Shown here: piece by piece, positions 7,790 through 53,900 of the stretch | How positions within the stretch are numbered: position 1 is the stretch's first letter | How the letters are laid out: every line of letters starts with the position of its first letter | NCBI GenBank assembly: GCA_965649765.1 | Contig: OZ287758.1 | Location: 45,198,001-45,262,000, forward strand | Reading direction: 5' to 3' | Length of the DNA stretch: 64,000 nucleotides | From: Bispira polyomma | Taxonomy: Eukaryota | The notes under the pieces: generated by a model | Told to the model about the DNA's origin: nothing | The model's database searches: none | The model's input: only the letters and a program-made list of their open reading frames with translations | Translations under genes and position numbers: made by a program

Positions 7790-8151
7790 ATTGTCTGCCA
7801 AGGACATGTCTCGCCTTCAAGCAATACAGAATTATACAGTATTCCCAAATGCCTCCTGTTCTCAAGATTTACTCTGCCTTCCTGGTAAATTTTAATGTAT
7901 GGTTAAAACTGCTACATTGGTCCAAAAGTGTTTCCATACAAGCCTCACAAAATACCTCAGCCCATATCTCACTCCTTACCTTTGATCGCCGCCTACACGA
8001 ATCAAATGTCAAATGTTTCAATCATAGTTCCTCATATGCTGCATCCAAGTTATGTAATGACCTCCCACAAGATACTAGGTGTTCACCTTTTCTTTCAACC
8101 TTCAGAAGCAAGCTCATGACTAATCTCTATCAAAAAGCTTATCCCACATGA
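7790..8151 (+). mobile_element. L2/CR1-type LINE ORF2 C-terminal relic (inverted copy at ~5530-5820)
   Basis: MSRLQAIQN and SYAASKLCNDLPQDTRCSPFLSTFRSKLMTNLYQKAY resemble the LQ.VQN and FS.AAP.LWN.LP..IR....L..FK..LKT.LF motifs of L2/CR1 ORF2. Confidence 0.65.
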
Positions 8152-11805: not shown

Positions 11806-11952
11806 CTACGGCACACAGACAAAGGCGTAGACATCGCCCAACTCTACCATTCCGCTGGTGACAGTCACAGTGATTTCACTTACACCCGCTTCACCCCCTG
11901 TAGGAATGGTGAGCTGCTTAGGCTGGACTGTAGTTGTGTCAGTAGTGGAAAA
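11806..11952 (-). CDS. Last coding exon: D part 3 (FSTTD...GVSEITV...YAFVCVP*)
   Basis: atttcag|TTT TCC ... CCG TAG TGA; paralogous to the second-half exons (VSEL/VSEI, terminal Cys-Val). Confidence 0.78.
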   Translation of the reverse strand, partial: FSTTDTTTVQPKQLTIPTGGEAGVSEITVTVTSGMVELGDVYAFVCVP

Positions 11953-14900
11953 CTGAAATCAGAGGTCAATACACAAATACATGAATGATGAATATACCTT
12001 TAAAAATGTTGCTTTTAAGTGAGTGTAAACTGATCGATTGAAGGTCTTCTTTCATTTATCACAGCCACTGTGACCTAGTGGTTAGCAATGTTAGCTTCGC
12101 AAGTACAGGACTAGCACCAGTGTGGGTTCAAGTTGGTTAAATTGATCCCTGTCTTTTTTAGTATCAATTCAGTCATGTCAAGATAGGCAAGAAAATTAGC
12201 ACAGTGGTGATGTGATAGTAACATTTCTAATTTTCTGTGGAGGATAGAGTTAACTGAGTGTTATAGATTTTTAGGGAAGTTTGGCAATAACAGCATTAAC
12301 ATGATTTGTGACCCTTCTATATTGCCTCCTGTCAAACCCAGATTATGTTCGACACCAGCGTAATCTGTCAGACTTTTGTTAAGTGAAGGCCTGATGAAAA
12401 AAAGGTGACATTAGTCATTATAAAAAACTGAAATAGATGTAGTTGTACCTATAATTTAAGGCAGTGTAAATGGTATATAAATACTATATATCACATATGT
12501 TGTTGTTCCTATAATCTTACAGGTAGTGTTGTGTAAATACTATATAAAAATAGTAAAAATATTTTTTTAGATATATGTACTGGTTCCTATAATTTACAGG
12601 TAGTGTAGTATAAACATTATAATATAACACATATGTAATGGTTCTTATAAGTTCCAAGCAGTGTAGTATAGATACTATTGAACAATGACAATCCAACATA
12701 CACTTTGTTGTACACTCCCAGCTGTCACTGTTACGTCTCCACTGCCTTGGATTCCAAAGGTGAAGGCCTTCACTGTATAAGGCTCTCCAAGGGTAGTGGA
12801 ACCTGTAGGAATTTATTGCATTTCTTATAATCAAATCTAGTATTTTTAAGGCACTAAATCCTCTCTACAAGATAACTCAAAGCACCATAACATCCTAATC
12901 AAATTCATAATAAAAAGGAAATAGCCAAAGTCGTCAAGAAAAAGATTAGAATTCAGCTAAGGAAAATAGAGGGATATGATGCAAAGATTTGGTTGAAAAG
13001 ATGAGACTAAAGGTAGTTCCCAAAAGATATAATGCTCTTTGCTATCATTATGGGTAGTGGACGATTATTCCAACAAGAATGAGTCAGATATGAGGCTGAT
13101 TTGTCGATATGACTAATGAGTGAATAACTGGACTTTTGTTTTATGTTTTGGAACCTTGAGAAAATGATAATATTTAGAGTCACTCGTGATGAACTGTATG
13201 GATGTATAAAATATTTTAGATAAACTGGCTAAAAGTTTTGTTTTGTAGATGAGGAGGTGCATTTTCAAAATGATTCCGTACAAAACAAGGAGTCTTGGTG
13301 AGTATTCGGCAAAAGTAGTTCTAAACAAACATGGGGGAAAAACTGGAAAAACATTGGGCAGGGAGTTGCAGTAGTATTATCAATCATACTCAGAGTACAT
13401 TTCAGTAATTAGTTACATCAGAGAAAAGAGAAACAAACTACTCATAGAGAGTAATTCAAAAGAAAAAAACAAAACAAAACATCAATACAAAATATATCAT
13501 CTGTTAACGATTATGATGTACCTCTTACAAATTTTTAATTGTTTTATATTATTTTATTATTGTACTGTTCATCTCCTACTGTGATATATATATATAAAAT
13601 TTATTATACTAAGAAATGTACACCAAAATTTGTTTCTGTGTGATTGACATGTTGGTATTAAAAGTGAATCAGTATGAAATCAATTCTTAATGATGTACAT
13701 GTTTGAAGCTTGCACCTTTGCACACATCATAATGTTTTTTGTTATATTTTAAAGTGACTAATGGATATGACAAGCAATATTATTTGTAACATAAAAAAGT
13801 ATATACTACTAAAAATCTTTATGTTTGATATACGCTAACTAAATAATTATACTATTGTATTAAGACCCTTGCTCCGGAACACAGACCAGTCTAGTGTAGC
13901 ATGTAATGCTACATACATAGTGTCTCGGATGACCACTTAAGACTTTTGACAAAGTGAAAATGTGCTTGTAAATTCTAATGCCGTGGTGACACTGGGCTTA
14001 GGTTTTGATTACACAAAAAATGGCTAACATAAGGTAAAACGTAATGAAATGTGAGCAGAATGTAGTGCATGTAAGTGAACATAAACATGCGTTACTAAGA
14101 TGGTCCCTTACTATCCCGTTATTTTTGGCTGTTTTCTAAAAACTTTCCTGAAATGGTTGGTGCGTTTGCGGGAAATGTACAACACATATTCAATGCGTAT
14201 TTAACTTAAAGGACACCAGACAAACTATACATCCAAATAATTTTTAAAACGAGCATAACGAGAACAAAATAGGTTCAGAAAGGTGGCTAACATATTATAA
14301 AACGTGGCCAACGATACAAACATAATTGAAACAGGAAAATTACTGAATGTGTTCAAAACAGCCCGTACATTGGGTTTTTTTTACGTTTCCCTGAATTTTC
14401 ACTTAGCTTGTCCCCCTTTTTTTACGTTTACGGAAATCAAAACGTACCAGACATAGCTCATTGTGACCAAGGCATGAGACTTGCTTATATTGCTATTAAA
14501 AGGTATTGTATACCAAGAATTACTGTGTCTAGAATTTATTTGGTATGTATACAGGTGCAGGTAAAACAGTTTGCTTTTTTAACTACTAACAATATACTTG
14601 CAATTATGCCACTATATTTGCATTTGCTGCAGTTATTGTCACTGATTTTGACAATGACATTTCAAAACTTAGAAAACTAACTTTGAAAATGTAGGACTTT
14701 GAAATGGCGCTGAGATGATTGAAGATAGATAAAGTGACATCCAACTTTGCTTTATCAATAAATTGATCATGAGGGGCCTAAAAACATTAACAGGGACAAA
14801 AACCGTGAAAAAGCTTCTCTGTGAGTACCTAATTCAAAGGTAAAATTTACTGTTGCATCTGGATCAAGCTTGAATATATTCGTAGCCCCTTCTTTTTGAA

Positions 14901-17900
14901 AGTAATGTTACTCACTATTGGCTATATAACATGAAAGAGCATCTGTATGTCATGAGGACAAAAATACAAAGGTGTTTGGTGGATTGGTATGAGGCAATTT
15001 ATTTTTCTTCATTTCAAGCATGACAAAGGCAATCACTAATTTCGAAAACATTCCACAAAACAAAAACACTTAGTAGTTTGCAAACCTTTGCCCTCAACCA
15101 ACAAGTTGAATAGGTTTATTAGCAACAGACGGAGACCTCTCAAAGCCGGCCATCTGAATGCATATCGATATGTAGATAAATAAGTTATTTGAACCCAAAA
15201 CCTACTTCCTAGTAGTACATGGTAAATACCTGTACACATTAAGTGCACCTTTGGTGCTCAGTATGCATTTAGCTGATATGCAGCACAATTTACTGGTTTC
15301 TTCCTTGGCACACAGTGCAACCCAAAAGTAACAGACAACAAATATACAAACAGATGGGTGAAAATATCTTTTATGTTTTTTTCATTTGCAGTTGTTATGC
15401 TCTGGTCTTTTATCCTGGACTGGCTAGCCGATAGAGTATCTGTACGTGGTAGATGGTCCCCAAAACAAATTCAAAATTAACAAATTTGGCAGAAGTCCAA
15501 TGAATTTGTCATGACAGACTCGTCACCACTGATACATAGTTAAAATGCAGTAAATTTTTTTTTTGGGTAAATTTCAATTATAAATATTTTTTGTATTTGG
15601 TGCTTTCAACTCTACTTTTTTAGCTCATCTAAACGATTTCCAATATATGTCCCTTTCGAATGACTGAACAAAAAAAAAAAGGTTCCTGTAGTTACACCTA
15701 TCAAAATGAACTGCTTTGTGATTAAGTTTGCTTGATGCCGATTTTGTTGACAAGTGATCACAACACTGTTAGACTAGTATCGTCTTGGACAGTATCGAGT
15801 GGTGAGATGATGTTTTCTGGCTTTTAGTATACACTTTGACCATAATGAATGAATACAGAGAGAGAGAGAGAGAGAGACCTACCCAATGTGTATGTGTCGC
15901 CTGCATCAAGTGAGATGGTTTGGTCAGAGTTGAGTAGAGCAAGTACTGGATCCACAAAGCTTAGAGGTTCAATGCTTAGAGTGAAGCCGTTACTGGAGAA
16001 GAAAGATTCCTGTGATGTGGAGGTGTCATCACATGCTGAAACCAAGGAGAACAGCTATAGTAGTACAATAATATGATTTTGAAGAATAGTAAAGGTTTTT
16101 AGCAGCCCAAGGGCTAATCTTGTTTGGTGGAGACCCTGACAAAATCAGGGTATTATTATAATCAGTTAACCTACAATAACCTACAATAAAATAAAACACT
16201 CATATACAATAAATTTAGTGAAAGTCCTGTTATTTAAATGTAATATTTTTAAAATTCCTTTATTGTTTTTATTGCATGAACAGAAGAACACATTAATACC
16301 ATATTAACCCTATACATAAGTAAAACAGAAACACATAAGTTTAAAAATAAACCTTAGTACAATACACAGCATAATGTAGTTTGGTGGTGATCTCACTTTT
16401 TTCAGAGAGATATTTCAGATTTCTAGACGTTTCTTCGTACCATTTTTTTCATAACAGAAGAATGGCTGTATGCAATTTAAAAATGCAAGTAGTTTCGAAT
16501 AGGTAGACAGAACAAATCCATTTGCTTACAAAGATTATGAAAGATGTGCATTTAAGTTTGAACTATTATAATTAGATAAAATATAAAATACAAATGATTT
16601 TATATTTAAAAAAGGTAGGCTATGCAACGCCCGCAAATACATCTTTTGCTCAATATAAAAAACACTGAAGAAAAAATGTGTGGCTGTTCTATCTTTGTGC
16701 AGTAGGCCCTGGAAGTAAAAAACATACCAGGTCACTGATTCTTTGGGGGCTGGCACAATAAGAATTTTAGCTCACTGGTAATATGGGTAAAACTATTCAT
16801 ATGTAAAAAGTTAATGTTGTCCCCTGTGGGTCATGGTACCACTTGACACATATTTCATTATTTAAAAACATGTATTCTTTTATTATAAAGACAAATGTCC
16901 TGCACATTAATTTATAGTCTTGAACTAGCCTCCACCAGTGATCCTACTTATTCCCATTGTTTAGTTCTTACAATGTGACAGTTACCATGAAGACCATTTT
17001 AAGGGTCATTTCAAGTGTCACTGGGTGCGTGTGATGCAACATTTGTAAAGGTCGTCCCATTGTTTAGCTTACAATGTTCTGTTTTGATTGCAATTAATTT
17101 AACTGGTCTAGTGATTAGGGTGCTGGTCTAGTTTTATTTGGTGGGATAAAATCTTTGGACAAGATATAAACATAAGTTTGCCTAGTGGCTGCAAATACCA
17201 GTTAAAATGATGGTCATATATTTTACTAATTTTACTAAGTAATATCTCCAGTGGCAGATTAAAGATCTTTGGGGACATTGATAAATGGTCATTCTTATGA
17301 AACCCTCGGCGCCCATAGTGGCTGCCCATGAGGATACCCTGTATTGTATAAGTGCACTATAACAAATATCCTAGTTCATTTTATTTTTCATTTTATTTTT
17401 CAATTGTACATCTCTTCGACATCTAGTATTTTAGTCTACATGGCTCTACACCCCAACTTGAGATAAGGTGACCATGAAGAATTTTGAAATAAAGGTGATA
17501 TAACTTGACATAAAGTCACCCAAACTTAAAGAAAAGGTAGTGAACTTTAAAGAGTGAGGGTGTTTTTAATTTTGTTTACGGTCACCCTTAGAAACAATTT
17601 ACTGAAGATATGGTTAAGTTTAAATAATATACAGTTGCCACATTCCACAAAATACTAAATCATGAACCATTACCATTACAAATGAGTACTAACAAGGCCA
17701 TAAATAGCCAAGCACACTTGCTGTAGGCCTGATTTGTTTTGTCCCTAAAAGCAGTTTTTAATCTAGTATTGGCTGTTTTGCTTAGGTATGTTTCTGAGTA
17801 CCTAAATTGACAAATTACAAGTCAACATTCAAGCAGTAGTGACTATTATTTTTGAAACCGGGAAAAAACATATGTGATAGGTAATTAGCGTAGACATTCT

Positions 17901-20900
17901 TAACTCCTGCTATGTGAATGAGTGCAAATTTAATGTTACGTCGAGCTGTTTCCAAACAAATGGATCTTGTCATTGTTGTTAGGCTCTGATCCCTCAAGCG
18001 ACTGAAGGTAAGAGAGTCTACCACTGCTGCGTTGTCACATCATACTTTGACAGTGGCATTTTTAAGTGATTGCCCCACATATGTGATAACACCACCAAAA
18101 CGATCCACATTTCAAAATGCACAATACCATAGTCATGAGGTTTTGAGAGGGGGGGGGGATGACAGCATATACACTGCTGTCTCACATACACATAGCCCTA
18201 ATGACCTGCGACGAGGTGTCAACATGTACTTAATGAACATCACCACTTGTTAAGTAACAATAATGACTGCACTGTACTCACCAAGGCTTGTCACTGGGTT
18301 GTCTAAAATAAAACAAAGTGAGACACATTTAAATTTTGTCAGACAATTAAGTTATAACTAGAAAGACACTAAGTAGAGCACCAGCCCCAGCAAACCCCCC
18401 CCCCCTCCCCACCCCCCAAAAAATAAAATAAAAAATAAAATAAAAAATAATTAAACAAAGAAAAAAAGTTATTTTTTTTCTAGGAACCACCCTTCTGCCA
18501 GCCTCAATAGACCACCATATTACAACACCAAATTTCATATACATTTGCTCAGTAGGTTTTTGTGTGTAATCTTGATGACAAACAGACAAACCAACAGAGA
18601 GAGACGCTACATAACGTCCTTGGTAGAGGTAGCAGAAAATGATGACCTTGACAAATGACCATGTCCACAATATAGTACCAATAATCAAATTGCTTTAGAG
18701 GAATGGCTAAAAGTGAACTTCCTAAAGCTATTATTAAATAAAATGATTAGCAATGGTTTTATGATGTTAGAGGTGTTGAATATTTATTTATTTAAATTGT
18801 ACTAAAATTGTAAAGTGCTATATAAAGGTATATAAGTGCTTTATAAATGTAATGTTATGCCAATAAAATACTCATCCTAATACATATACTGTTGAAATAA
18901 TAGATAATGAAAAAAAAATAGATAATTTGAAAACACAATTCTGAAGTACTGGTGCTGATTGGCTGTACTTTGGCAGTTGGAAAAAAGCTAATGACCGTGA
19001 CTGAAAACGATAAAGGTACATTAATATGTAAAGTATAGCAAACAAAAGAGGTAATTCTTTAAAGTTGATCCATTTTAGAGTGAACCTTCAACATACCAAA
19101 CATTTCCATTAAAACATATAAACTGGCTCCCAATTAACTATTGTATGTACATTTTAATTTACCTGTTGTGACATTAAAAAAACGACATATATATTTGCAA
19201 TATTGTTTGACTACAGGTTTAACTACTATCTGTATTAAAGTTTGCAATTTCAGTTACTGTGAGCATCGAAGAAAGCCATGGGATGTCCATTAATGAACAT
19301 CTCCAAGGTTCTTGAAGCCTGCCACCAGAGTTAGGGCCCAATGAAAGAGGACCATATGTAGTGGTCACTTGAGCCACAATGTGTCTGTTTGTACTTGAAC
19401 CAAACTAATATTTAACTAACAGGAGCGAACAAACATGCAAATGTCTGACATTTTAAGAGATCAAATCGACTCACCTACACAACCTGTTACCAGTATATTG
19501 GACAAAATTGCACTCTCGCCTTTTGGCCTAAACTGCTTGAGACGTACTATGGTAACATTGTATATCTTCCCTCCCAGGTCAAACTCGATATCATGCTCCT
19601 CAGATTCATCTAATTGGCTCTAAATAATAGACACTGTAAGATTTACTTTGTAACCAGGCTTACAATTTTCAAAAAATCAAAACAGTTGCTATAGACGCAA
19701 TAGAAGTAAATCATGTAAATATATATCAACATATATATGTGTGTCGTTTTCAAGGTAAGCGTATTGAGTTCCAGGACAGATATTCACACATTTTTTTCAG
19801 GAAACAACATATTTCACTCTTTGGTCAAAATGTACGAGAAAATTTGAACATTGCTAAAGAATGAGAGTCTTAAAACTTATGACATTATGGGGACAAATCT
19901 AAAAAAAAATGCTCGAGTTATGCTAAGAATTAACAGTGTATAGACCTGGTTTTAGTTCATAAGTATGTGTAGTGGATGTAGTAGTTACTGTTAATGTAGG
20001 ATTGGAAACAGGTTGAGATGGAATAGCATATTTTGTAACCCAAATAGCTGAAATTGTGTTCAGCAACCCTGATACTGGTTTCTATTACTTGTAAAATTTT
20101 AAGATGCTACATCTTGAACTGCCAAAAAGACAAAACTGATCTTAAATATAGTAAATGTGAGAAAAATGAATAATTGAATAGTACGTGACCAAATAAATCT
20201 ATTCTCATCTATTCAATACAATAAAAAAAATAAATTTTCTACCAATACCGAGCAAATTGTTATAGCTCTTTTTGATTAATGATTAATTTGACGTTTTTCA
20301 TGGTGGTAAATATCTTTACACTCACAAACTGTTGAGTGGGCTTGGATGTGTTAGCTATCAACACCATTTTGACACTGGTTACACGCTGAACTGTTGCAGA
20401 AAAACTAAGCAGGTCGAATGGCTCCCTGTTAGACCGTTGTATCCAGATATTGTCACCCGCTGGCTTAATGTAAGTTCTTCCTGATCCAGCAGCAGCAGCA
20501 TTGGGTTCTGGATCTTCTACATCCTTTGTACGAATAATTTCCAAGTCTAACTGATTGAAGGTGGATGTAATAAAGCGTTTTCCCTCTGGACAGTCATCTA
20601 TTGGACGAGCTGCAGTAAAACATTTGAGTGAATTATGATTATTCTGTCTGATGTCTATGTTGATTAATTTACTTGGGTTTTAACATTGCTGTCAACAGGC
20701 TTTTGTCAGATTCTAACCATCAGTTCACTGGTGGGGGAAATCAGAACAGGGTAATTGCTCAAGGTTCCCTGCTATGTGAACCTAGTCTACTGACATCTTT
20801 ACCATACAAAGACCAAGGCCTAAATTCGAACCCATGATGGTACAGGTGAGGGAAGTGTCGTAATATTACACCAAATAGGGCAAGTACCTGACACACATTC

Positions 20901-23900
20901 CTATGAGATTGATTAATTACTTGATTGGAGTTTTAACCTCACTTTAAACACATTGTAGAGGGCAGTTTTACTGGTGGAGGAAAGCAGTGAATACTAGTTA
21001 GTCAAGATGTTACACTGTAAACAACCAGACATCGGCAAGTAGCTGCCTACTGTCCCACATGAAGCAGTTCCTGAGATTTGAGTTTCTGACCTTAGTGGTG
21101 ATAGATAATGGCTTTGTTATGTCACTGGAGTCCCTCGTCAAGTCGTCCACAGAGTAGTATATATACTGGTAATAGCCCATTTTCTTCAAATTCACAATCA
21201 TGAATTCAACACCATATAGTGAGAAATTAATCTTACCAACACAGGCAATAATGGTCACTTCCGACAACAGCAAGTTTTCACCATTGAAATTGTTTATCTT
21301 TAATTCGGACACATTGTCTATTCCACCTTTTACTGGAAAGCAATTCAGTTCTGCTGGCTTGGTAATTAGTACCTTTAGAAAAAAAAAACCACAATTAATA
21401 ATGTACCTGTTTGCGCATATGCATTATCTTAATTTCTTCATTTCTAACTACTTGCATACAAAGAAAAGTGTTGTTCAATCATTGTATTTTGAGATAGTCT
21501 TAGGGAAATAGTGTTATACCCTGTGTAGAGTCTTTTCTAGAAAACCGGGGCTGCCTTGGCCAAGTGGCTAGCAAGCATTGTGCTTTACAATCACTGGTCT
21601 CTCAACTCTGGGCGGCGTGATCTCGAATCCCCTCAATGCCTATGTGGGAAAGGTGGTAGTTCCTTACTGTGGTTTCAGTGCAGAACCTTGATCAACTGTA
21701 TGCAGTGTTTCCTCCAGCGTTTCCAGCTACCCGTCCCAATATAACCTAAACAGGTACTAGAGTGGACGTTAAATATCCAAATTCAAATCAACTTCCTAGA
21801 AAACCGAGATGTATGAACCAGTTCTGTCACCTATAGAAAGGGAATGCCTCACAGTTGTTGCTGTGTGGAACAACAATTTGGAGCAATATTTCCTTTTATC
21901 GAACTTGGGGACTTTGAGAAAAGTTAGTTTTGTTTTACATGAAAGGCTAAATGTGAACTAAGTATATTTTGTATAACAGAGCTTATTCTGCATATTGTTT
22001 TGATGCAGGAGTTGTACTTTCTTTGAGTTTTGATCATTTGACTCTTTGACACTTACTGTCTCTGTGGTTGAACTGCTCCCCTGTACCACTATAAGATCAG
22101 CTTCACTAACTTCTGATAACGTAAAACAAAATCGTTTGAGGGTGAACATGCTTGTTGTGAATAGTGTGGGACTCAGTGTGTAGCTGAACTCATCCTGATC
22201 AGTCACTGTGATTCCATTATCTGACCCAGTAAAGGCTATAGTTGGATTGGTTAGGCTGAAAGCTAAACTTTTTGCAACAAAATGATTACTGTCGAAAGTT
22301 GCTGTGGCGATGCCTTCATTTTCAGAGCACACTATTGGAGGTGTGGTTGTGATTGGAGTAGTGGTGGTTGGTGTGGTGGTTGGTATTTTGCTAGTTGTTG
22401 TGGTGGTTGGAGTTGTTGTACTTGGTATAGTGGTGGTTGTGGTGGTTGGTGCGGTTGGTGTTGTGGTTGGTTTTGTGGTAGTTTGTGTAGTTGTTGTCAT
22501 GGTTGATGTGGTCGTTGGCTTGGTTGTGGTAGTTGTGGGCTTAGTGGTGGTCTTCTCTGTTACAAAATATATGTACAATTATAGTACAACAATTATGGTT
22601 TTTGGTTACATCAACATAAGACTGATAGGTGAATTAAAGAGTTAAACATTTACCAAGTCATCGTAAAATATTTAAAAAATACTCAAATGTTTTAGTAAAC
22701 CAATGACCTTGGACCATGTCCACAATCTAGTGACAATGGTCAAATTGTTTTTAGAGGAATGGCAAAGAATAAAGTTTCTTGAACTACTACTGATTAAAAT
22801 GATCAGCAGTGATTTGGTGGTTTTCGGGATTTTGCCAATAAAATACATGCTCTAATACATGTACTGGTAAAAAAATAGATTATTTGAAAACAATTCTAAA
22901 TCAGGGAATGGCCGTTACTTGTGGTGATTGGCTGTACTTTAACAAACACAAAAACGTTAATTATCATGGCTGAATACCAGATAAAGGTACATCAATATGT
23001 CAAGTATAAATATTAACAGAAATAAGATACCATTCTTGAACCATTTTAGCGTGATCCTTCAACATACTAACCATTTTTGTTAAAACATATCAACTGGCTC
23101 CCAATTGACTACTGTATATTTTATTTAACTGTCGTCACATTTAAAATAAAACATATATATTTGCAAAATTGTTTAACTACAAGTTTAACTAACATCTGTA
23201 TCTGTATGAAAGTGATAAGTTTTTTTAAATTTCAGTTACTGTGACTTTTATTACAGTGAGCTTCAGAGAAAGGCTCAGGATGACAATTAATGGGCATCTC
23301 CAACGTTGCAATGACAGAGGGCCATTTTAAGTGGTCACCTAAGCCGCAATGTTGCTGTCTGTACTTGAACCAAAGACATATTTAACTAGCATGAGCAAAC
23401 AAACATCTGAATGTTTGACATGTTAAGAGATCAAATCCACTCACCTACACAACCTGTTACCAGTATATTGGACAAAATTGCACTCTCGCCTTTCGGCCTA
23501 AACTGCCTGAGACGTACCATGGTAACATTGTATGTCTTCCCTCCCAGGTCAAACTCGATATTATGCTCCTCAGATTCATCTAATTGGCTCTAAATAATAG
23601 ACACAGTAAGATTTAGTGTGTAACCAGGCTTACAATTTTCAAAAAAACCAAAACAATTGCTATAGACACAATAGAAGCAAAGCCTGTATATATGTGTGTC
23701 GTTTTCAAGGTAAGTGTATTGAGTTCCAGGACAGATATTCACACATTTTCTCAGGAAACAACATATTTCACTCTTGGGTCAAAATGTACGAGAAAATTTG
23801 AACATTGTCAAAGAATGAGAGTCTTGAAACTTATGACATTATGTGGCCAAATCTCAAAAGAAATGCTAGAGTTATGCTAGGAATTAACAGTGTATAGACC

Positions 23901-41900: not shown

Positions 41901-44900
41901 TGATTTGTGGAACATATCCTGGCAAGCAGTTCTCTGATAATTTTTTTTAAGGATCTTCAGCCTTCCCTCTCGCATTAATCTCTCTTGTATTGGTTCAAGT
42001 CAAGTATTGTTAGCAGCCATAGCCTCATTCAAACATTCAAACTCTATCTCTTCTGATTTCCAGCACTCTGCATTATTTCTGAACTGATCTTTTTCATTTA
42101 ATTGCAGTGTCCTATTATATTGACACATGTCATTTCACTTTGATAGCTTCAGATCATATCATTAGCTATAATCAATTGGGAGAGACCGTAGCTCATCCTG
42201 CTCTCGCAGAATCAGAGCAATTCGAAAATTTGGCCATGAATATGGATCACGCCCTTAAGGCTTTGTGACGTAAACACAAAAAACAATCGCCACTAAACCA
42301 TGTTATCAATGAAAAAAACTGTCTAGAAACATACACTACTTTGTTAGACAAGCCTCAAAGTTAATTTTTAAAAACCATACCTTCGAAAATGATAAAGATG
42401 GGATTAAATAACAATTCAAGCTCAATTTGATAAATTTTAACATCCATTTTACCAATTTACCAGTATTATATAAATAAGTGTATATTTATAAGAAAAATAT
42501 GAATATTTGACTCAGTACACCCTTCCCAAATATGACACAAAGCACATACATATACGGGTTCAATATTACCATAAATCACACCATCAGATAAACAAATATA
42601 TCAGTATTATTTTTTATGATTGATTTAATTTTCATTAAATTTTAATAAAAATGCAATAAACTCACAAAAAAAAAAAAAAAAAAAAAAAATCATACAAAAT
42701 ATGAGTGTGTAGCGTATGTAATATCTTATATATGCTAGATCAATACATCTATTGTGTCACAATAGAAAGGCTTCTAACTGAGAATTGTGTACAAATATGA
42801 CGTCATAATAGGAGAATCGTTGTATGGGAGGTTATAAAGTTTTATAGCAAAGTATTATTGTTTTAAATTGTCTAGGTATATGAAAATAGTTGAACATCTT
42901 GGTAAAGTGTTGTTTCACTATCAAGTTCAATCGGCAAAAAGGCCCGACTTTGAGATCGGGGCAAAAAAATCAAGAAAATTTATTTTTGGTGGGGAAAATG
43001 AAACTGTGGGATGACCTTCTAGATCGAACTGATTGTGCCCCGATATGACGGGACACTGACCCTGATCAAACTTAAAGATCATCTGCCTTGGAACTGCAAG
43101 TTGGCAAGACCTTCCACAATGTGGTAGGATCGAACCTATTGGCGATAGGATCTGATATATTTCCCTTTGATCAAACGTATTGGCAACACGATCTAACGGA
43201 TTCATAACCCAAACCATTAAGATTGAACATTATAAAACTGAAGTCGGGACTGCTGTGCGAAGGCTGTCTGACCCTAAAAATATCCCTTTTGAGCCCTAAA
43301 ACTCATGGATTATTGAGTAACTAATTGAATACAATGGCAGCAATCGACAAAAGAGAATGTATGAGGAGACTACGGACTGTTTTAGCTTTCTTGAGTTACA
43401 AATATGCTTCCTCATGGTGATACTGCAACAGAAGAGAGACAACACTTAGGCTCAGGCTCAAGAGGAATTGAACCCAAGACCACCGGCCCCTTAGGCTCCC
43501 CCGGAGAAGGTCTGGCTTCCACGAATGTCAACCCTACACTGGGTCAAACCCTGGATCGGGCGAAGAGAGGCCCTGAGATATTACACTAACCTAATGCCAG
43601 AGCTAGAAGAAGGGAATGGACGTGGATACAGAAACTTTTTAGGTTGCCTCCGGATCTATTCGAGGAAATCAAAGAGAGGATCACACCCCATGTCAAGAGA
43701 GCCGCAACCTGGTACTGAAAGCTCCTGGATGTAAGACTGAAACTGACAGTCACCTTGACGCACTAAGCCACTGGGGAGAGTTACAGTTTCTTGTCATACC
43801 AATTCAGGGTGGGGAGATCGACCATCACCAAGTTTATTCCAGAAATCTGTAAGGCCATTATCCTAGAATACGAGATCAAAAACCTGGCCTGCCTAACCAC
43901 CCCGCAGACTGGATAGAACTGGAAGAAATCTACAGAAACCAATGGAACATCTCTCACACTGTGGGCTCTATTGACGGAAAGAGTAGCCATCAAGAAACCT
44001 CCCAAGGCTGGCAGTGAATTTTTTAACTATGAAGGGTTCCATTCGATTGTGCTGTTAGCCCTGGTTGATGCTGACTACAGATCTATTTGGGTGAACATTG
44101 GCTGCAGTGGTTTCTGACACTCAAATTTTCAACGACTCATGACCTAAAGGAAAAGTTGGAAGACGAATCCATCGGGCTGCCAAGACCTGCACCACTTTTT
44201 GAAGGATCTAAAAGTGATGTTAACTACTTCCTACTTGGGGATGATGCCTTTACTCTGAAGTCCTGCTTTATGAAACCAAATTTAAGGAAGGCACTGACCA
44301 ACAAATAAAGGATATGCAACTATAGAATATCCAGGGGAAGGAGGGTCACATTTGTAATATTTTTCAGCAGGTTCTGGCTTCTATTGACAACCATGCAACA
44401 ACATCCTTTAGCGGCCTTAAACCAGACTTTTACATGTTTTATATCACACAATATCCTAAGAAGCCGCTGAGGAAACCCAGCACTGGAGCACAAAAATCCT
44501 CAAGATGTTCCTCCTGAGCCTAAGGAGCAGCTTGTGGGAGATCAAAAGGTCAACGATAGAAATCCATCTAGAGGGGGAAAAGAGCAAAGAGTCACTTTGC
44601 AAAATGATAGAATATAAAGATTGAGTTAGAGCCTAACCATCTGAGCCCATTGAGGAGCCACTCCGAACCTGAGATGTTGCAGTAGCTGCAAAGAAAAAGT
44701 TCCTTTTGAGGATTACCCAAATATTTTAAGAACAATTACTAAGCTGTTTATTACAACCCTCACTCTCTTACACATCTCACAAAACACACTTCATACGGTT
44801 TAAACCCAGCACCCATACACGTAATATTTTTGGCCCCACCATAGAAACATAGTAGATTCAATGTAACAGATCATTTTTCTAATTTTGTCATTTGTATGAC

Positions 44901-47900
44901 AACGTGTTTGGGAACAAAACTGGGTTCAAACCTAAAAGTGGTGTGATCACTTGTTTGGAAGAGAAATTTATTATTTTGGCCATGAGCAACTCTTTGTATT
45001 CCACAACTGTCAAAATATAGGGTTACAAAGAGTTTTCCCTTTTTTATTCTAAATTATTTTTAAATCATTTCTTTTCTCTCATTATTTAAAAAAAATTGCC
45101 ATGGAAAGAGAGACTTTTTCTCTCAATTTGGTGATTATTTGGGCTTTCTTTATTTCTGTTACTTGGAGATTTACTGTTATTTAATTATAACTCTTGGCCA
45201 TTGGTTTTTAAGTTCTGTATATTTGCAATTGTTTGAGTAAGGACAGTGTAATCTGTTTGTTTGAAATTTTATTTAGGGTTTGAACTCTGGGCCACTGATT
45301 TCTGTGTGTATGTGTGTGAATTTTTTTTGAGGGGACTGTGTAATCTGTTTTTCTTTGGGTTATATTTTGGGTTTTGAACTTTGGGCCAATGATATTTTTA
45401 TTTTTGTCTGTATGTGTGAATTGTTTTTGAGGTGACGGTGTAATCTGTTTGTTTAGGGTTTTCAGCATACAAGCTCAGATATTTTTCTTCAAAGATTTAG
45501 GTCGCACTGAAAAGGGCCAGAGGTTCTGACTGGCGGCCTTCAAAATAAAATCAGCTAACAGGAGATTGTTGACTGGCTACTATGGTGGTGGTGTTGACTG
45601 TGGAGGTGGAGTTGGCTGCGACTGTGAAGCGGGTGGGGGCTATTGCTGTTGCAGGGTGAGCGATCCAAGCTGAGTTGCTGAACATTCACTGTGATAAGCT
45701 CTGATGATTCAACTTCTCTAAGCTGCTTATCTGACACTGGTGTTGAAAGAGGTACTGGCTTGTTGGAGCTACGGATCTGTTCATACATAAAGTCTTCCTG
45801 GTTATACCGTAATTCCTGGTTATACCGTATCAGAAATGTTGGAATTGATGAAGTGTTATGAGCCAATTCTTTAAACATAGTGGAGGCATTCAACGGCGGG
45901 CTAGAGAACTGTTTACTGGGTGAGAGCTAGCCATCTCACCTTTGTGGTACCCCCTGTGATGCCATCTGAGAAATAGTATGCTAACAGAGTCTGACTCTGC
46001 AATACCTTCTGCAGAGCAGCCTGAGAAGAGGTATCTGTATCCAGCACGAGAACTGAATGCCGTGGAGGCTGCTGAGGCTGCTGCAGAGGTAACTGCTGAG
46101 ATATCTGCTGTGAAATGCAGCTTAAAACTGGTGCTCGAGACCGCTTGAAACTGGGAATTGTTCTCACAAAGGTGTTTCATGAGGTGGCTGCTGATATCTG
46201 AGCCCTAACAGGGTGGACAATTTCTCTGGATACTCATCATACTTGTCTCTGTGGAACTGTTTCCGCCAATACTGCAACACCTTGACAAGTCATGTACCTC
46301 TGTCTGATGCTGTGGGGATGCTCCCTGTGGGGATGCTCCCCTGTGTGCACATGACAGCTGGCTCTAAAGCAGAAGACTTGATGTGATGCACTATGTGCGA
46401 CCCAAGAAATGAAAAGTGGGGCCTGTTCTTCCTCTCTGTGAAATCTAGTGCTCCTTGTCCTGACTTCTTGGCCATCAGCTTGCCAAAGTGGGTATGCTGG
46501 GATTCAAACCAGGTCTTGACTTTGGTTATCTTGAGGGCGCGACTGTTGGCAAACTCCTCCCAGAGCCTGTCTGTCAGAGATTTGTCTTTGAACTGTTTAT
46601 ATTGCTGGTTGTATAATACCTCGTTATTCCGGACAAAATCCACTGTGGCCTCCTCATCTGCGTTGGTCAGTATCATGTTGACCCTCGACTCCAACGATCC
46701 CTCTCTGTCACTCTTGTCACTGTGTGCCGGAATTGCCCTCTGATCATTCTTTTTCTGTCTGTCAATCTCATCTGATGAAACTTTAAACATTAAAGTCCCT
46801 CCCTGTCTCCCTCTTCTTTTATGTCTTCATCTTCCTCTTCATCCTCTTTCCACTCGGCATATTTATTTATGTTGTGTATATTTTAAAAAACCTAAGCTTT
46901 AACACTTTCCCTAAACTCAAAGACATACAATAATTGAAAACAAAAAAAAAATCCTCTCAGCTAAAAACACAACTGGTATACCAGCCAGCAATCTCCAAAT
47001 ACAACAATTCTAGCACTGTGAGGATGTTTTTGTACCCAAACACCCTGGCAAGCCCAATTTTGATCCTATTGGTCAGAAGTGAATACATCAGATCCTACTT
47101 GCAGTAATTTTGATCGTATCCCTCCCACGTTCGATCCTTTAGCCCACCTGGCAGATGTGATAGTCAATACGTTCTGTCCTACTCTGGCTACTTTGATCAG
47201 GTTAAAAAACGTATCAACTCCAAGTTCTGATCAAATGACAGTAAGTTTGATTGGGGCACAATACATCAGATTGGAATATGAGTAAGTTTGATCTCAATAC
47301 TAGCCTGTTCTGTCCTGCAAAAAAATGGAGCAAATCTGAGTAGGATCAAACAGCCCAGTAATAGGACAGGCCTGGAGTGCGGTAAGACCTATCCGACACA
47401 ATGTATTGACAATACGATTGAATGTATTCATCAATATGATTTAGAGGTGTGGGTAAGTCAGATACTTTTAGAAAATATCAAACATATTTGATATCCTTCC
47501 CCACCTTCACGACCACCCCATTTTTGCCCCCAGACCTATACGATCATGCCCCGGACCTCAAAATCGGAAAGGTCGGCCACCAAATTGGCATAGTGAAATC
47601 ACCATTAAAGGAATAATTTTAAGGCTGTGCATATTCAAGCGAAAATGAGTAGGATTTATTAGTATTTGATGTATTTGTGTGTTTACGTTACTAACCCCTT
47701 TAGACAGAATAATCTGTCCCTATTTAGCCGGATTCCTTGCTGATATTCTGACAGCTAAATCACGATAAGGGACAGAATAGATACCATGAATCGACATAGA
47801 TAGAGATAGAATCTCGTTAAAATAAAAATATACCCTCATTACCTATATATGATATAGTAGCCAATTTTCTGTTATTTCATGCCTACATAAAATGAAAACT

Positions 47901-50900
47901 AAACCACAAACATTGGCACAATTCTGTCGGCCATATTACATCAGGCTAAATTTCCAATGTTTTGCTTATGGTAGCCGCTCCATCGCCAATCGGCTATACA
48001 TCAGTTTAAAAAGCTATCATTGGTCTACTCGCCCATTGGTTTATAATTCACCTTCAGTGGTCAGACAACACTTAATATGCGTATGGCCATAGTAGGACCT
48101 TGGCTAGTTTAAGCTTTATCAGCATGATAATCTGAGTGTGACTTTACATACAGGTAATTACACAACCGGCAGTTGAGGGCTGTGGTCTAATAGGAGGAAT
48201 TTGGCATTTATTCTGAAGTATTAAATCAAATAAATATGAAACTTTAGTTTTCAGTGATATCTAATATATGATTTACCTTTATACATACGGTGTGACAGCA
48301 TTCATTAATATTTTACTATATTCCTTGGTTTTTGTTCTAATTTTTCATCTAATAAGCCGTACTCTTTCATAAATATCATTTTTGCAATCTCACTACAATC
48401 ATGTGGTGGTATTTAGCTACATACTTAGTTTTTGACTTTTGATCTGGTGACTATAAACAGTTTCACACCACTTACTGTTTCGGTCGTTGTGCTGCTACCT
48501 TGTACCACAATGACATCAGCTTCACCAAAGTCTGATAACGTGAAACAAAATCTCCTGAGGGTGAATGTGCTTGTTGTAAATAGTGTAGGATTCAGTGTGT
48601 AGACGAAATCATCCTCCTCAGTGACTGCGATTCTATTATCCGACCCAGTAAAGGCTAAGGCTGCAATGGTTGGTTTAAATTCTAAATTATTGGCCAAAAA
48701 TGTACCACTTCCAAATGTTGACTTGACAAACACTTCATTTACTGAGCATACAATTGCAGGTGTGGTGGTCGTTGGTGTGGTATTGGTAATTGATGTTGGT
48801 GAGGCCATTTTAGGAATACCTTTAATAGAAATACATATACAAAACAGTATAAAATGTTGCTTCTCAGTAAATATATCACAAATTATATATTCAATAAGAC
48901 AATTAAGATATGTATTAGCGAGGCAACTTAAACATTTTCTCACACGAAAATATCCAACAATAACATTTAAGTCCCTAGGATACTTGCACTTGTAGATACT
49001 GATTAGTGTTATTTATATTATCCACTTACTAATTGCTATCGTGGAAGCCTCCATGATTTCAGAATACAGGATACATATTCTCCAAGAAAACTCAAGGACA
49101 ACTTAAAGGAATGCTATGTGGAAGTACTTGTACACATGGAATAAACCTGTACTTGTGACCACACATTTTAATAGAGCTTCAGTGTTATATGTATTTGTGC
49201 ATTAACCAGAGTATATATGCAACAATCACTACAGCCTGATAATTGTGCGTAAGCTACTCGTAAATTCACCCCTTGCCTCATTGGTTAGGAGCACCAATGT
49301 TGATTTGAATGCTGTTCTTTCCTTCATGTGGGAAACATTGTCAGGTAGTTGCTGCAGGTTAGTGCTTTACAGTGTGCTTCAGCATAAGTCTCTTTGACAA
49401 TTGAATCTGGCCATGTTGAGATATGTCACCTAGCGTTGTGAATGAACTAAATTCAAATTCTATAGCTCTTTTAGTAGGATGAAACTGTGTTTTGACTGGC
49501 TGAGTGTCAACCCGGTAAGCCAGTGATGAATAGAATTAGTTATTTTATCAGAGGGAAGAAATCAAATTTAAGTTGACTTCTAAATGCACCAGTATGTTGT
49601 CTTATACTATATATCTAATAAAATATTTACATCGTAAGGCTTTGAGCTCAGATATTCTAATGAGAAACTGCTTTTATATTATAAATATTAATATGTGCAA
49701 TAGTTTGTGGTAGATTTTAAAAGCACTGGAAACTCCTTTTATCAAAATTGTGGAACACAATGTGATTTACATCAAGTAGTATGACCATATTGTTAACAAA
49801 TAAAATATCAACAATACTTACATCCAAGGACTTTGAGCTGAGATATCCTGACAACAGGCTTGTTGGTCAATGCTGGTACCAAGCTATTGATTTTGACACG
49901 TTCAACTGTTTGAGGCAAGTCTTTTTCAAAACACTGCAACTTGTTTTCATTAAAGGCCTGAAATATATGCCATATATATTTATGAAAACAGAATGTGATG
50001 TAGCTCTTTAGCGTGTGCTGTAATATTTGTGGGCATATATGATGCACAAACAATTCAAGCTGGGCTATTTGTATTTTTACTAGTCATTGGCAGTGACATT
50101 TTTGCATGTTTATAAAGTAAATATTTAGGGTATTGTAAAACAGGGAGTAGATATTGTCCAAATTCTTCTTTGGATTCATCAATAAGTCTGTTTAGATTAC
50201 CTCATTTCTGCGTGCGGTTTTGCCAATTTTTTGGTATCGGTGAAACATAATATCTTAGCTGGTGATCTGCAAAATCTTCTTAAGGGTTTAGTAACGTAAA
50301 CACAAAAACACAACGGCGATAAAGTATGATTCTCTACGAACACCCATTTCTACTCTGTATACCAACTATGATGGCTTTAAAAATATACTTTAGTGAGGTT
50401 TTTAACTATTTTTATATGTCCAGACAAATTGAAAGGTTAACACTTTGCTATAAAGCTACAAAAAACCCTATATAATGATTCTTGTATTGTGACGTCACAC
50501 AATTTAAAAATCTATGTAGAACGTCATATTTGTAAACAAATCTCAGAGAGAGTCCTTTCTATTGTGACATAATACGAGTATTGATCCAGCATATATCAGT
50601 ACAATATAGAGGCTACAAAACTTTATAAAACATGTATATTATTTCTAGTGATTTACATTTTCCAGTATGTTTCCTTATTTTATAAAAAAACAAAGAATAT
50701 AAAACATCTTTCTGTTTAGAATAGTGTAACTTTAATGTTTTTCTAAAATAAGCCCAGTTTTTGTGCTTTTATTAAAAAACGAATTCATTCAAAATAATGC
50801 TGATGTTTTCCTTTTTCTAGTCATGCAGAATACTTTAGTATTGATTCTTTCTTGGTATGTGAATTGTGTCACGTTTGTGAAGCATATACTTTGAAAATAT

Positions 50901-53900
50901 TACCCATTTTAGTTATAATTTTACACACTGCTATAAGTATTGTGTGTCTCAAGATGCCTTATAAAATGATACGTAAAATATATGAAGTAGTATATAATTA
51001 AAATATATGTCATTATTTATAATTCTACTTATGAAAACGTAAATATGTTATCTATAAATCGAGTTTAAGGCCACACAGAAAAAGTTGTGCTGTTTCTGAG
51101 AAGCTCAAACACACATAACGTGGTTTTCGGCAATCAGTTTATGTGTTTACGTTACTAAACCCTTAAGTTTGTGACCAAATTTCATGCTGATGGTTAAAAC
51201 CAAATCTACAATGCTTCCTACGATGTGTGTTGGGAAATTTACCAATTGATCCAAGGCATTTTTGATAGATAATAAGCACCTGATTGGAAGGTTTACTCTA
51301 TTGGTCAGATTAAAATCCAACACTTGTGCAATACATTTTGAGGGTGCACAGGACAGGCGTACACATATATCTATACTAGTGTTGAAATCAGATAGATTAA
51401 TACAGTTTTGTATGTGTACTTAAAACAAATAGAAAGTCGCCACATAGCAATGCAACAAACCTTTTTGTCTTTTACTTTTTGATGTGCAAGTCCAAAATCC
51501 AACACCAAATTGCCAGATACAGCATTTTCAATATGAACACAAAATATTAAAACTCGAAAGCTTTGCAAATTTGACATTTGTATCAATATGTTATTTTTAG
51601 GAATGCTTGTGTCTAATTCATACGATGTTGTTAAATCAAATGCAGCTTTCTGTACTTCAATATTAGAAAGATTAAGTTTAAGGAGAATTTGAAGGTCTCC
51701 ACTACCATTGCGACTGGAAACAAAGGTTTCATTTTGAAAACAGCTGTCTGAGGGCTTAGTGGTGGTTGGTATAGTGGTGGTAGGTGTAGTGGTGGTTGGT
51801 ATAGTAGTGGTTGATGTAGTAGTGGTTGGTGTAGTGGTGGTTGGTGTAGTGGTGGTTGATGTAGTGGTGGTTGGTGTAGTGGTAATACGTGTAGTGGTGG
51901 TTGGTGTAGTGGTGGTTGATGTAGTGGTGGTAGGTGTAGTGGTGGTTGGTGTGGTGGTAATACGTGTAGTAGTGGTTGGTGATGTGGTGGTTGTTATAGT
52001 AGTGGTTGGTGTAGTAGTGGTTGGTGTAGTGGTGGTAGGTGTAGTGGTTATTTGTGTAGTTGTGGTTGGTGTAGTGGTGGTTGATGTAGTTGTGGCAGGT
52101 GTAGTTGTGGTTGGTGTAGTGGTGGTTGATGTAATTGTGGTAGGTGTAATTGTGGTTGGTGTAGTGGTGGTTGGTGTAGTGGTGTTAGGTGTAGTGATGC
52201 TAGGTGTAGTGGTGGTTGATGAAGATGTGAGAAGTGGAATACCTGTAACAGTCAAATATATATAATATATACCTAATACATTAAATGAACAATCGAGATT
52301 ATGGTATTTAATACAAATTATGTTGAATTAAATAGGCTTTTTATACAAATAAATATCAACAATACTTACATCCAAGGACTTTGAGCTGAGATATCCTAAC
52401 AGCAGGCTTGTTGGTCAATGCTGGTACCAAGCTATTGATTTTGACACGTTCAACTGTTTGAGGCAAGTCTTTTTTAAAACACTGCAAATTGCTTTCATCA
52501 AAGGCCTGAAATATATGTCATATATGTTTATAAAAACAGAGTGTGATGTAGCTCTTTAGCGTGTGTTGTAATATTTGTGGGCATATATGATGCACAAACA
52601 ATTTAATCTGGGCTATTTGTATTTTTATTAGTCATTGACAGTGACATTTTTGCATGTTTATAAAGTAAATATTTTAGGGTATTGTAAAACAGGGAGTAGA
52701 TATTGTCTAAATTCTTCTTTGAATTCATCAATAAGTCTGTTTGAAGTACCTCATTTCTGTGTGCCGTCTTGCCAATTTTATGGTATCGGTAAAACATAAT
52801 ATCCTAGCTAGTGATCAGCAAAATCTTCTTAAGTTTGTGACCAGATTTCATGCTGATGGTTAAAACCAAATCTACAATGCTTCCTACGATGTGTGTTGGG
52901 AAATTTACCAATTGATCCAAGGCATTTTTGATAGATAATAAGCACCTGATTGGAAGGTTTACTTTATTGGTCAGATTAAAATCCAACACTTGTGCAATAC
53001 ATTTTGAGGGTGCACAGGACAGGCGTACACATATATCTATACTAGTGTTGAAATCAGATAGATTAATACAGTTTTGTATGTTTACTTAAAAAAAATTAGA
53101 AAGTCGCCACATAGCAATGCAACAAACCTTTTTGTCTTTTACATTTTGATGTGCAAGTCCAAAATCCAACACCAAATTGCCAGATACAGCATTTTCAATA
53201 TGAACACAAAACATTAAAACTCGAAAGTTTTGCGAATTTGACATTTGTATCAATATGTTATTTTTAGGAATGCTTGTGTCTAATTCATACGATGTTGTTA
53301 AATCAAATGCAGCTTTCTGTACTTCAATATTAGAAAGATTAAGTTTAAGGAGAATTTGAAGGTCTCCACTACCATTGCGACTGGAAACAAAGGTTTCATT
53401 TTGAAAACAGCTGACTAAGGGCATTAAGATGGTTGGTGTAGTAGTGGTTGGTGTAGTGGTGGTTGGTGTAGTTGTGGTTGGTGTAGTGGTGGTTGGCGTA
53501 GTGGTGGTTGGTATAGTGGTGGTAGGTGTAGTGGTGGTAGGTGTAGTTGTGGTTGCTGTAGTGGTGGTAGGTGTAGTTGTGGTAGGTGTTGTGGTGGTAG
53601 GTGTAGTTGTGGTTGCTGTAGTGGTGGTAGATGTAGTTGTGGTAGGTGTTGTGGTGGTTGGTGTTGTGGTGGTAGGTGCTGTGGTGGTAGGTGTAGTAGT
53701 GGTTGGTGTTGTGGTGGTTGGTGTAGTGGTGGTTGGTGTTGTGGTGGTAGGTGTAGTGGTGGTAGGTGTAGTGGTGGTAGGTGTTGTGGTGGTAGGTGTG
53801 GTGGTGGTAGGTGTAGTAGTGGTTGGTGTTGTGGTGGTAGGTGTTGTGGTGGTAGGTGTAGTGGTGGTTGGTGTAGTGGTGGTTGGTGTTGTGGTAATAT

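What the first reader, a model, noticed from the sequence alone, without database searches (positions are those of the whole stretch)
11806..52505. One ~140-aa beta-rich domain family in several divergent types, with co-varying cysteines that predict its disulfides
Seen: B (CFQNETF...FRVLMFCV...LQCF...VERVKI...SQLKVLGC), A (CSENE...FTLKRFCF...LNCF...VSELKI...LSEVTIIAC), C (CPEGKRF...FDLLSFSA...VTMVRL...LSNILVTGC) and D (CDDT...YTVKAFTF...VSEITV...LGDVYAFVC) share length, hydrophobic strand pattern and the phase-0 intron position. A, A' and B have four Cys. C and D lack both inner Cys together and keep the terminal pair. Inference: disulfides C1-C4 and C2-C3, leaving no free thiol for polymerisation. 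Established: an N-to-C disulfide closing a ~150-aa beta-sandwich that ends in a hydrophobic strand plus GC is typical of discoidin/F5/8 type C (galactose-binding-like) domains, but their conserved Trp motifs are missing here. This may be a very divergent lectin-like domain or an unnamed one.
Basis: partly seen in the sequence, partly recalled or inferred. Interest (0 to 1): 0.78.

Follow-up and report, generated by a model that had tools for sequence, protein, structure and literature searches.

The report
Mucin beads with hidden discoidin-like fold
A giant invertebrate mucus-type gene alternates sugar-carrying Thr/Pro threads with about 130-aa cysteine-stapled domains that no sequence library recognises; partial models point to the common galactose-binding (discoidin/CBM32) fold, so this is an unnamed family of a known kind, not a new fold.

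Summary
On the minus strand lies one very large mucin-like gene made of two-exon units. Each unit holds a Thr/Pro-rich thread plus the first 89-91 residues of a domain, a phase-0 intron, then 44-47 residues ending in Cys. I mapped 8 B, 1 A', 7 A, 5 C and 1 D unit. D ends the protein (VCVP-stop).

Exon-wise profile comparisons show A, B and C, plus new types E and F outside the window, are one family. D fits more weakly.

The Cys pattern holds and extends. About 14 types in this genome and a second species carry both inner Cys or neither, never one. That reflects only 2-3 independent changes.

Pfam, PDB sequences, a 1.84-billion-protein HMMER scan and the ESM Atlas give no named relative.

The spliced whole domain could not be handed to the fold tools, so the C2-C3 contact and the full fold remain untested. 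No RNA data exist. Earlier notes of this scan report similar "hidden discoidin beads" elsewhere in this genome.

The parts
63372..63509 (-). Type B, exon 2 only (its exon 1 lies beyond the window end)
61586..62626 (-). Type B domain unit (exon 1 part 62626-62360, intron, exon 2 61723-61586)
59589..60630 (-). Type B domain unit
57788..58828 (-). Type B domain unit
55987..57027 (-). Type B domain unit
54185..55226 (-). Type B domain unit
52368..53409 (-). Type B domain unit
49820..51742 (-). Type B domain unit (exon 1 part 51742-51476, exon 2 49957-49820). The last Cys codon is split by a GC-AG intron.
51743..52255 (-). Example of a Thr/Pro-rich (PTS) stretch in the same exon as the B domain start. 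These stretches are 176-286 aa, about 70% Thr, with no Cys.
41424..48748 (-). Type A' domain unit (exon 1 part 48748-48476, exon 2 41555-41424). Its 7-kb intron holds inserted DNA.
39816..40638 (-). Type A domain unit (40638-40366 / 39947-39816)
37623..38723 (-). Type C domain unit (38723-38457 / 37763-37623). It follows A after 7 residues, without a PTS stretch.
35690..36514 (-). Type A domain unit
34132..34945 (-). Type A domain unit
32384..33483 (-). Type C domain unit
30453..31277 (-). Type A domain unit
28895..29708 (-). Type A domain unit
27147..28246 (-). Type C domain unit
25197..26017 (-). Type A domain unit
23449..24548 (-). Type C domain unit
21241..22329 (-). Type A domain unit
19479..20592 (-). 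Type C domain unit
11806..16035 (-). Type D, the C-terminal domain, in three exons (16035-15883, 12802-12702, 11952-11815), then Val-Pro-stop. The paralogue ends the same way.

Best explanation
The region is the 3' two-thirds of a gene for a giant secreted mucin-like glycoprotein, about 5,000 residues within the window. Dense Thr/Pro threads, presumably O-glycosylated, alternate with compact beta-sandwich 'beads' of about 130-136 aa.

The beads belong to a lineage-restricted, unnamed sequence family. Its fold is most likely the galactose-binding-domain-like jelly roll shared by discoidin/F5-8 type C, CBM32, F-type lectin and DOC domains.

The first and last residues are Cys. As in F5/8 type C domains, they most likely form a disulfide that pins the two chain ends together, so the threads enter and leave at one pole and the loops of the other pole stay free. 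A second, dispensable disulfide (C2-C3) is present in types A, A', B, E and F and absent in C and D.

The array grew by tandem duplication of a symmetric phase 1-1 two-exon unit and is still being homogenised.

Inferred, not shown: the beads act as non-covalent binding or cross-linking nodes, possibly for glycans. This would suit a mucus-type protein that lacks the VWD and cystine-knot ends used by classical gel-forming mucins.
For: Gene model:
- Canonical splice sites and consistent phases in all units, zero Cys in the threads, and a conserved VCVP-stop end.
- Coding constraint, dN/dS 0.1-0.57.

One family:
- Exon-wise hhalign with reversed-sequence controls.

Fold:
- AlphaFold models of exon 1 of type C (pLDDT 69) and type A (pLDDT 66).
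- A search of 48,161 PDB chains returned CBM32, IFT25, PITH, DOC/APC10, neuropilin b1, factor V/VIII C, DDR2 DS, discoidin I, F-type lectins and SUN2 in about 45 of 50 rows (type C) and all 50 rows (type A).
- The matches always cover the first 85-110 residues of 126-160-residue domains. That leaves room for the 44-47 residues of exon 2.
- Both types hit the same chains over the same ranges.

Cys:
- Both inner Cys or neither in every type found.

No VWD:
- No VWD match on this chromosome.
Against: - Foldseek found nothing.
- There is no sequence link to any known family: Pfam on exon pieces, PDB profiles, and hhalign against this genome's own canonical F5/8 C exons at 0.1%.
- No conserved sugar-binding motif is visible.
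- No RNA evidence of expression or splicing exists.
- The two models share much of their alignment, so they are not fully independent.
Confidence: 0.68

Rival explanations
1. The beads are a beta-rich fold of their own. The resemblance of the partial models to galactose-binding-like domains is only a common strand arrangement.
Against: Nearly every one of 100 listed rows from 48,161 chains is one superfamily. The matches are colinear from the domain start, for two divergent types.
Confidence: 0.15
2. The units are ZP-N / VERL-like immunoglobulin-type egg-coat repeats. These also have C1-C4 and C2-C3 disulfides and O-glycosylated linkers.
For: They share the nested Cys pattern and occur as tandem, homogenised repeats with glycosylated linkers, as in abalone VERL (PMC5480393).
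Against: No ZP-N or Ig-like chain appears among the structural matches. No PDB sequence hit to VERL repeats was found. The protein ends with domain D and a stop, with no ZP module or membrane anchor. The Cys spacing also differs.
Confidence: 0.04
3. The array is not an expressed gene but a decaying or non-coding tandem repeat.
For: No RNA run exists for the organism. No annotated protein exists in 1.84 billion representatives, only four single-exon ORF calls. One 5.2-kb block is a perfect duplicate.
Against: Every one of about 45 exons is open, with intact splice sites and consistent phases. dN/dS is below 0.6. The same types and order are kept in a paralogue and in a second species.
Confidence: 0.05

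Closest known systems
F5/8 type C (discoidin) domains, Pfam PF00754, e.g. factor V/VIII C domains, neuropilin b1/b2, DDR DS domain
   Same: The size is similar (about 130-160 aa) and Cys sits at both ends. From my own knowledge, F5/8 C domains carry an N-to-C disulfide. The last strand ends in a hydrophobic pattern plus Gly/Ala-Cys. The partial models align to the first 110 residues or so of these domains.
   Different: No Pfam match on the exon pieces. hhalign to this genome's own F5/8 C exons gives 0.1%. The Trp-rich core motif is missing. The second disulfide sits elsewhere than in DDR domains.
Bacterial CBM32 carbohydrate-binding modules (e.g. 4a42, 2v72)
   Different: Sequence identity is 8-10%. 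No ligand residues can be mapped, and CBM32 modules have no terminal disulfide staple. The setting also differs, an animal mucin rather than a glycosidase.
Gel-forming mucins (VWD-C8-TIL heads, PTS, cystine-knot tail)
   Same: Very long Thr/Pro-rich stretches are interrupted by small Cys-containing domains, much as CysD domains interrupt the PTS of MUC2/MUC5.
   Different: There is no VWD on this chromosome and the C-terminus is domain D, not a cystine knot. The interrupting domain is unrelated to CysD. All Cys seem paired, so covalent polymerisation is unlikely.
Abalone VERL ZP-N repeat array
   Same: Both are homogenised tandem repeats of a small domain with two nested disulfides, joined by O-glycosylated linkers (PMC5480393).
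   Different: The fold matches are not Ig-like, and there is no ZP module or anchor.

Membership tests
F5/8 type C (discoidin), PF00754 | Match to the Pfam profile above its cut-off | tested here: not met
   hmmscan at E up to 10 on nine exon pieces gave no hit. The same profile finds 29 canonical exons elsewhere in this genome and none at this locus. The joined domain was not tested.
F5/8 type C (discoidin), PF00754 | Profile-profile similarity to canonical members | tested here: not met
   hhalign of the family's exon-1 alignments against 19 canonical F5/8 C exons of the same genome gave probability 0.1-0.3%.
F5/8 type C (discoidin), PF00754 | Cys at both domain ends forming an N-to-C disulfide | tested here: inconclusive
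   Cys is the first and last residue in every type. The bond itself was not measured, because no whole-domain model could be made.
Galactose-binding-domain-like fold superfamily | Jelly-roll beta sandwich that superposes on known members | tested here: inconclusive
Lectins of this fold (CBM32, F-type lectin) | Conserved sugar-binding residues, or binding shown | not testable with these tools
   Only C1 and one Phe are nearly invariant across types. No binding motif can be mapped without a full model.
ZP-N domain | Ig-like fold with C1-C4 and C2-C3, usually with a ZP-C module in the protein | tested here: not met
   No Ig-like or ZP-N structural matches. No PDB sequence hits. The protein ends after domain D.
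Gel-forming mucins | VWD assemblies and a C-terminal cystine knot flanking the PTS regions | tested here: not met
   There is no VWD match on contig C11 and the C-terminus is domain D followed by a stop. The N-terminus of the window's own gene was not seen. The paralogue seems to start with a signal peptide and an F-type bead (inference).

The most novel reading that the evidence does not exclude
The beads are glycan-binding modules that recognise the O-glycans on the threads of neighbouring molecules. This animal would then build mucus gels by reversible lectin-glycan cross-links instead of disulfide-linked VWD and cystine-knot ends. That would be a different way to polymerise a mucin, carried by a domain family no database names.
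Probability: 0.2. Interest if true: 0.7.

Novelty: new variant of a known kind. Interest (0 to 1): 0.4.

Why it matters
The result gives a name and a likely fold to a domain that sequence libraries miss. Such domains make up much of several giant mucus-type genes in this animal. It shows that a mucin can be built without the usual polymerising ends. It also offers a simple natural test of disulfide pairing, since types exist with and without the inner Cys pair. The practical gain is better annotation of invertebrate mucins and a candidate lectin-like module to test. It is not a new fold or a new principle as far as the evidence goes.

Tried and rejected
- Pfam on nine exon pieces found nothing.
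- Word-index protein search with A exon 1 found nothing, though that tool is limited by length.
- ESM Atlas, tried twice, gave no usable hit.
- HMMER profile of exon 1 against 1.84 billion representatives found only four true relatives. All are single-exon ORF calls from two ENA metagenome assemblies. The other eight hits are repeat noise.
- PDB sequence profiles A1, A2 and A6 found nothing.
- Foldseek on the type C model found nothing.
- The JGI metagenome scan found no relative.
- No RNA run exists for the organism.
- The VERL/ZP-N idea was rejected on fold matches and on the gene's end.
- Literature searches for a described mucin with discoidin-type beads found none. I therefore could not verify the earlier notes' remark that the design is already known from worms and molluscs.
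- I tried to find the earlier finding said to lie 2.7 Mb upstream by fetching 70 kb there. It held no Thr/Pro-rich frames, so I probably misread its position.

All comparisons, in scripts too, were done exon by exon. The stretch just beyond the window's right end appears to read N (a 20,311-codon open frame). I did not read, fill or look it up.
Full report
WHAT IS THERE

The window is G000:C11:45198001-45262000 of a 1.04-Gb animal genome. From about 11.8 kb to the right end, the minus strand carries one continuous gene built from a repeated two-exon unit.
- Exon 1 starts in phase 1. In most units it encodes a Thr/Pro-rich stretch, then the first 89-91 residues of a domain that begins with Cys. 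It ends at a phase-0 donor (GTAAGT, GTGAGT or GTAAAA).
- Exon 2 encodes 44-47 more residues, ends with Cys and leaves in phase 1.
- In the B units the only in-frame model uses a GC-AG intron (T|GCAAGT) that splits the last Cys codon. The next exon supplies GT, so the Cys is kept.
- The order, 5' to 3', is: at least 8 B, A', A, C, A, A, C, A, A, C, A, C, A, C, D.
- C follows A after only 7 residues. D follows C after 2 residues.
- D has one extra intron and is followed by Val-Pro-stop. A paralogue 160 kb away ends in the same way, so D is the C-terminal domain.
- The Thr/Pro stretches are 176-286 aa before B (about 70% Thr) and about 83-86 aa before A. They hold no Cys.
- About 5,000 residues are encoded in the window.

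IS IT ONE FAMILY?

Yes. All comparisons were made exon by exon.
- B-C 98%, B-E 97%, C-E 96%, and C-F 83% (exon 1) and 96% (exon 2) hhalign probability.
- A against a profile of B+C+E+F: 94%, P 1e-7 over 85 colinear columns for exon 1, and 91% for exon 2. Reversed-sequence controls for the A and D comparisons gave P above 0.1.
- D is the weakest. Two colinear pieces reach P 3e-5 and 2e-4 against the family profile, and its last exon is not significant on its own. Its place, length, terminal Cys and intron position agree.
- E and F are further types, found in the paralogous gene (L001, L004) and in a second species.
- Between paralogues and species dN/dS is 0.1-0.57, so the exons are coding and evolve fast.

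THE CYSTEINES

A, A', B, E and F have four Cys at aligned positions. So do an F-like array at C11:45.44-45.47 Mb and a chromosome-13 relative.

C and D lack both inner ones. This covers C in three variants of the second species and in the paralogue, D in both paralogues, and four distant relatives on chromosome 3. No sequence has just one inner Cys.

On a tree of exon 1 the state changes at least twice, with D as a possible third change. The pattern fits a C2-C3 bond well, but two or three events are not a statistical proof.

C1-C4 follows from their position at the two chain ends and from the fold. Neither bond was measured.

WHAT FOLD?

Sequence methods are blind here:
- Pfam found nothing.
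- The word-index search found nothing.
- The ESM Atlas found nothing.
- PDB sequence profiles found nothing.
- A full HMMER scan of 1.84 billion representatives found only four single-exon fragments, from ENA assemblies ERZ22147071 and ERZ27264458.

- Type C with a 22-row alignment gave pLDDT 69 and pTM 0.54.
- Type A with 24 rows gave pLDDT 66 and pTM 0.47.
- Foldseek found nothing.

- These made up about 45 of 50 rows for type C and all 50 rows for type A.
- Both types hit the same chains over the same ranges. Examples are 4a42_B 1496-1580 (rmsd 2.5-2.7 A over 76-77 residues) and 2yc2_A 1-89.
- The matches always cover the first 85-110 residues of 126-160-residue domains. That is what a domain lacking its last 44-47 residues should do.

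I therefore read the beads as galactose-binding-domain-like jelly rolls, at about 70-80% confidence. They are not canonical F5/8 type C members. The Pfam profile finds 29 ordinary F5/8 C exons in this genome but none here, and profile-profile comparison with those exons gives 0.1%.

HOW WIDE IS THE FAMILY?

Single-sequence searches find copies only at C11:45.2-45.43 Mb. The family profile reaches further:
- an F-like array of 11 copies at C11:45.44-45.47 Mb;
- one gene on chromosome 13;
- arrays at C3:40.37-40.61 Mb, a region that also holds VWD matches;
- C3:55.0 Mb, plus weaker hits on C2 and C5.

Those I read have the same Cys-first, Cys-last layout, and where I found exon 2 the domain is split at a similar point.

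Earlier notes of this scan describe "hidden discoidin beads" in other mucin genes of this genome. I treat them as leads. My own profile hits show such relatives exist, but I did not check those particular loci.

HOW IT LIKELY WORKS

Shown: the exon structure, the family, the Cys pattern, the Thr/Pro threads, the stop after D, and the absence of VWD on this chromosome.

Inferred:
- The protein is secreted. The paralogue seems to begin with a short signal peptide followed by an F bead.
- The threads are O-glycosylated.
- The terminal disulfide pins both chain ends at one pole of each bead. From established knowledge of discoidin-type domains, the variable loops at the opposite pole are then free to bind.
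- With all Cys paired, the molecule cannot polymerise through thiols. Any network must be non-covalent, perhaps by bead-glycan binding.
- No binding motif is conserved across types, so a purely structural spacer role is about as likely.

NOVELTY AND SCORE

This is an unnamed, narrowly distributed sequence family of a very common fold, set in an unusual mucin layout without VWD. That makes it a new variant of a known kind, of moderate interest.

No RNA data exist for the organism, so expression and splicing remain to be shown.

Noticed in passing
window 27200-32436 and 32437-37673: Two adjacent 5,237-bp blocks (A-A-C units with their introns) were 100% identical in three sampled 400-base stretches. 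This is either a very recent duplication or conversion, or an assembly artefact. B units repeat every 1.8 kb or so at 98-100% identity, introns included.
   Followed up: partly
window 49820-49822 and the same place in every B unit: The only in-frame splice model for B exon 2 uses a GC-AG intron (T|GCAAGT) that splits the terminal Cys codon. B-like copies in the paralogue and the second species also seem to keep a GCAAGT or GCAGGT site there, judged from their translations.
   Followed up: partly
window 41600-48400, ORF 46293-46790 (-): The 7-kb intron of the A' unit holds inserted DNA with a 166-aa ORF that matches the MADF DNA-binding domain (E 8e-7). It is probably part of a transposon.
   Followed up: partly
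G000:C11:45356001-45436000 (L001-L008): A tandem paralogous gene has the same design: F, B-like, A'-like, A-like, C-like, E, D-like, then a stop. It adds the bead types E and F, both with four Cys.
   Followed up: yes
G000:C11:45440780-45474143 (L051): An array of 11 F-like beads repeats every 3.2-3.4 kb, just upstream of the paralogue. Whether it is the same gene or a third one is open.
   Followed up: partly
G000:C3:40.37-40.61 Mb (L050, L052), C3:55.01 Mb (L053), C13:16.84 Mb (L049): These are distant relatives of the bead in other Thr/Pro-rich genes. The chromosome-3 arrays lie near VWD matches (C3:40.54 and 40.70-40.71 Mb), so some beads may sit in classical VWD mucins.
   Followed up: partly
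L009, L011, L012 (ENA ERZ22147071, contigs ctg28976l and ctg26857l): A 155-kb contig in a metagenome assembly carries the orthologous gene of a related animal, with bead types F, F, B, C and further A- and C-like units. It is host DNA inside a metagenome.
   Followed up: partly
window 33483, 28246, 24548, 20592 versus 38723 (type C exon 1): Four of the five C copies, and all C-like copies of the second species, have a Trp in the motif DNIWI. This is about where discoidin-type domains have their core Trp. The copy at 38723 has Leu there.
   Followed up: no
window 5564-5821 (-) and 7849-8151 (+): Two similar ORFs lie in inverted orientation downstream of the gene. They are probably the arms of a repeat element.
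   Followed up: no
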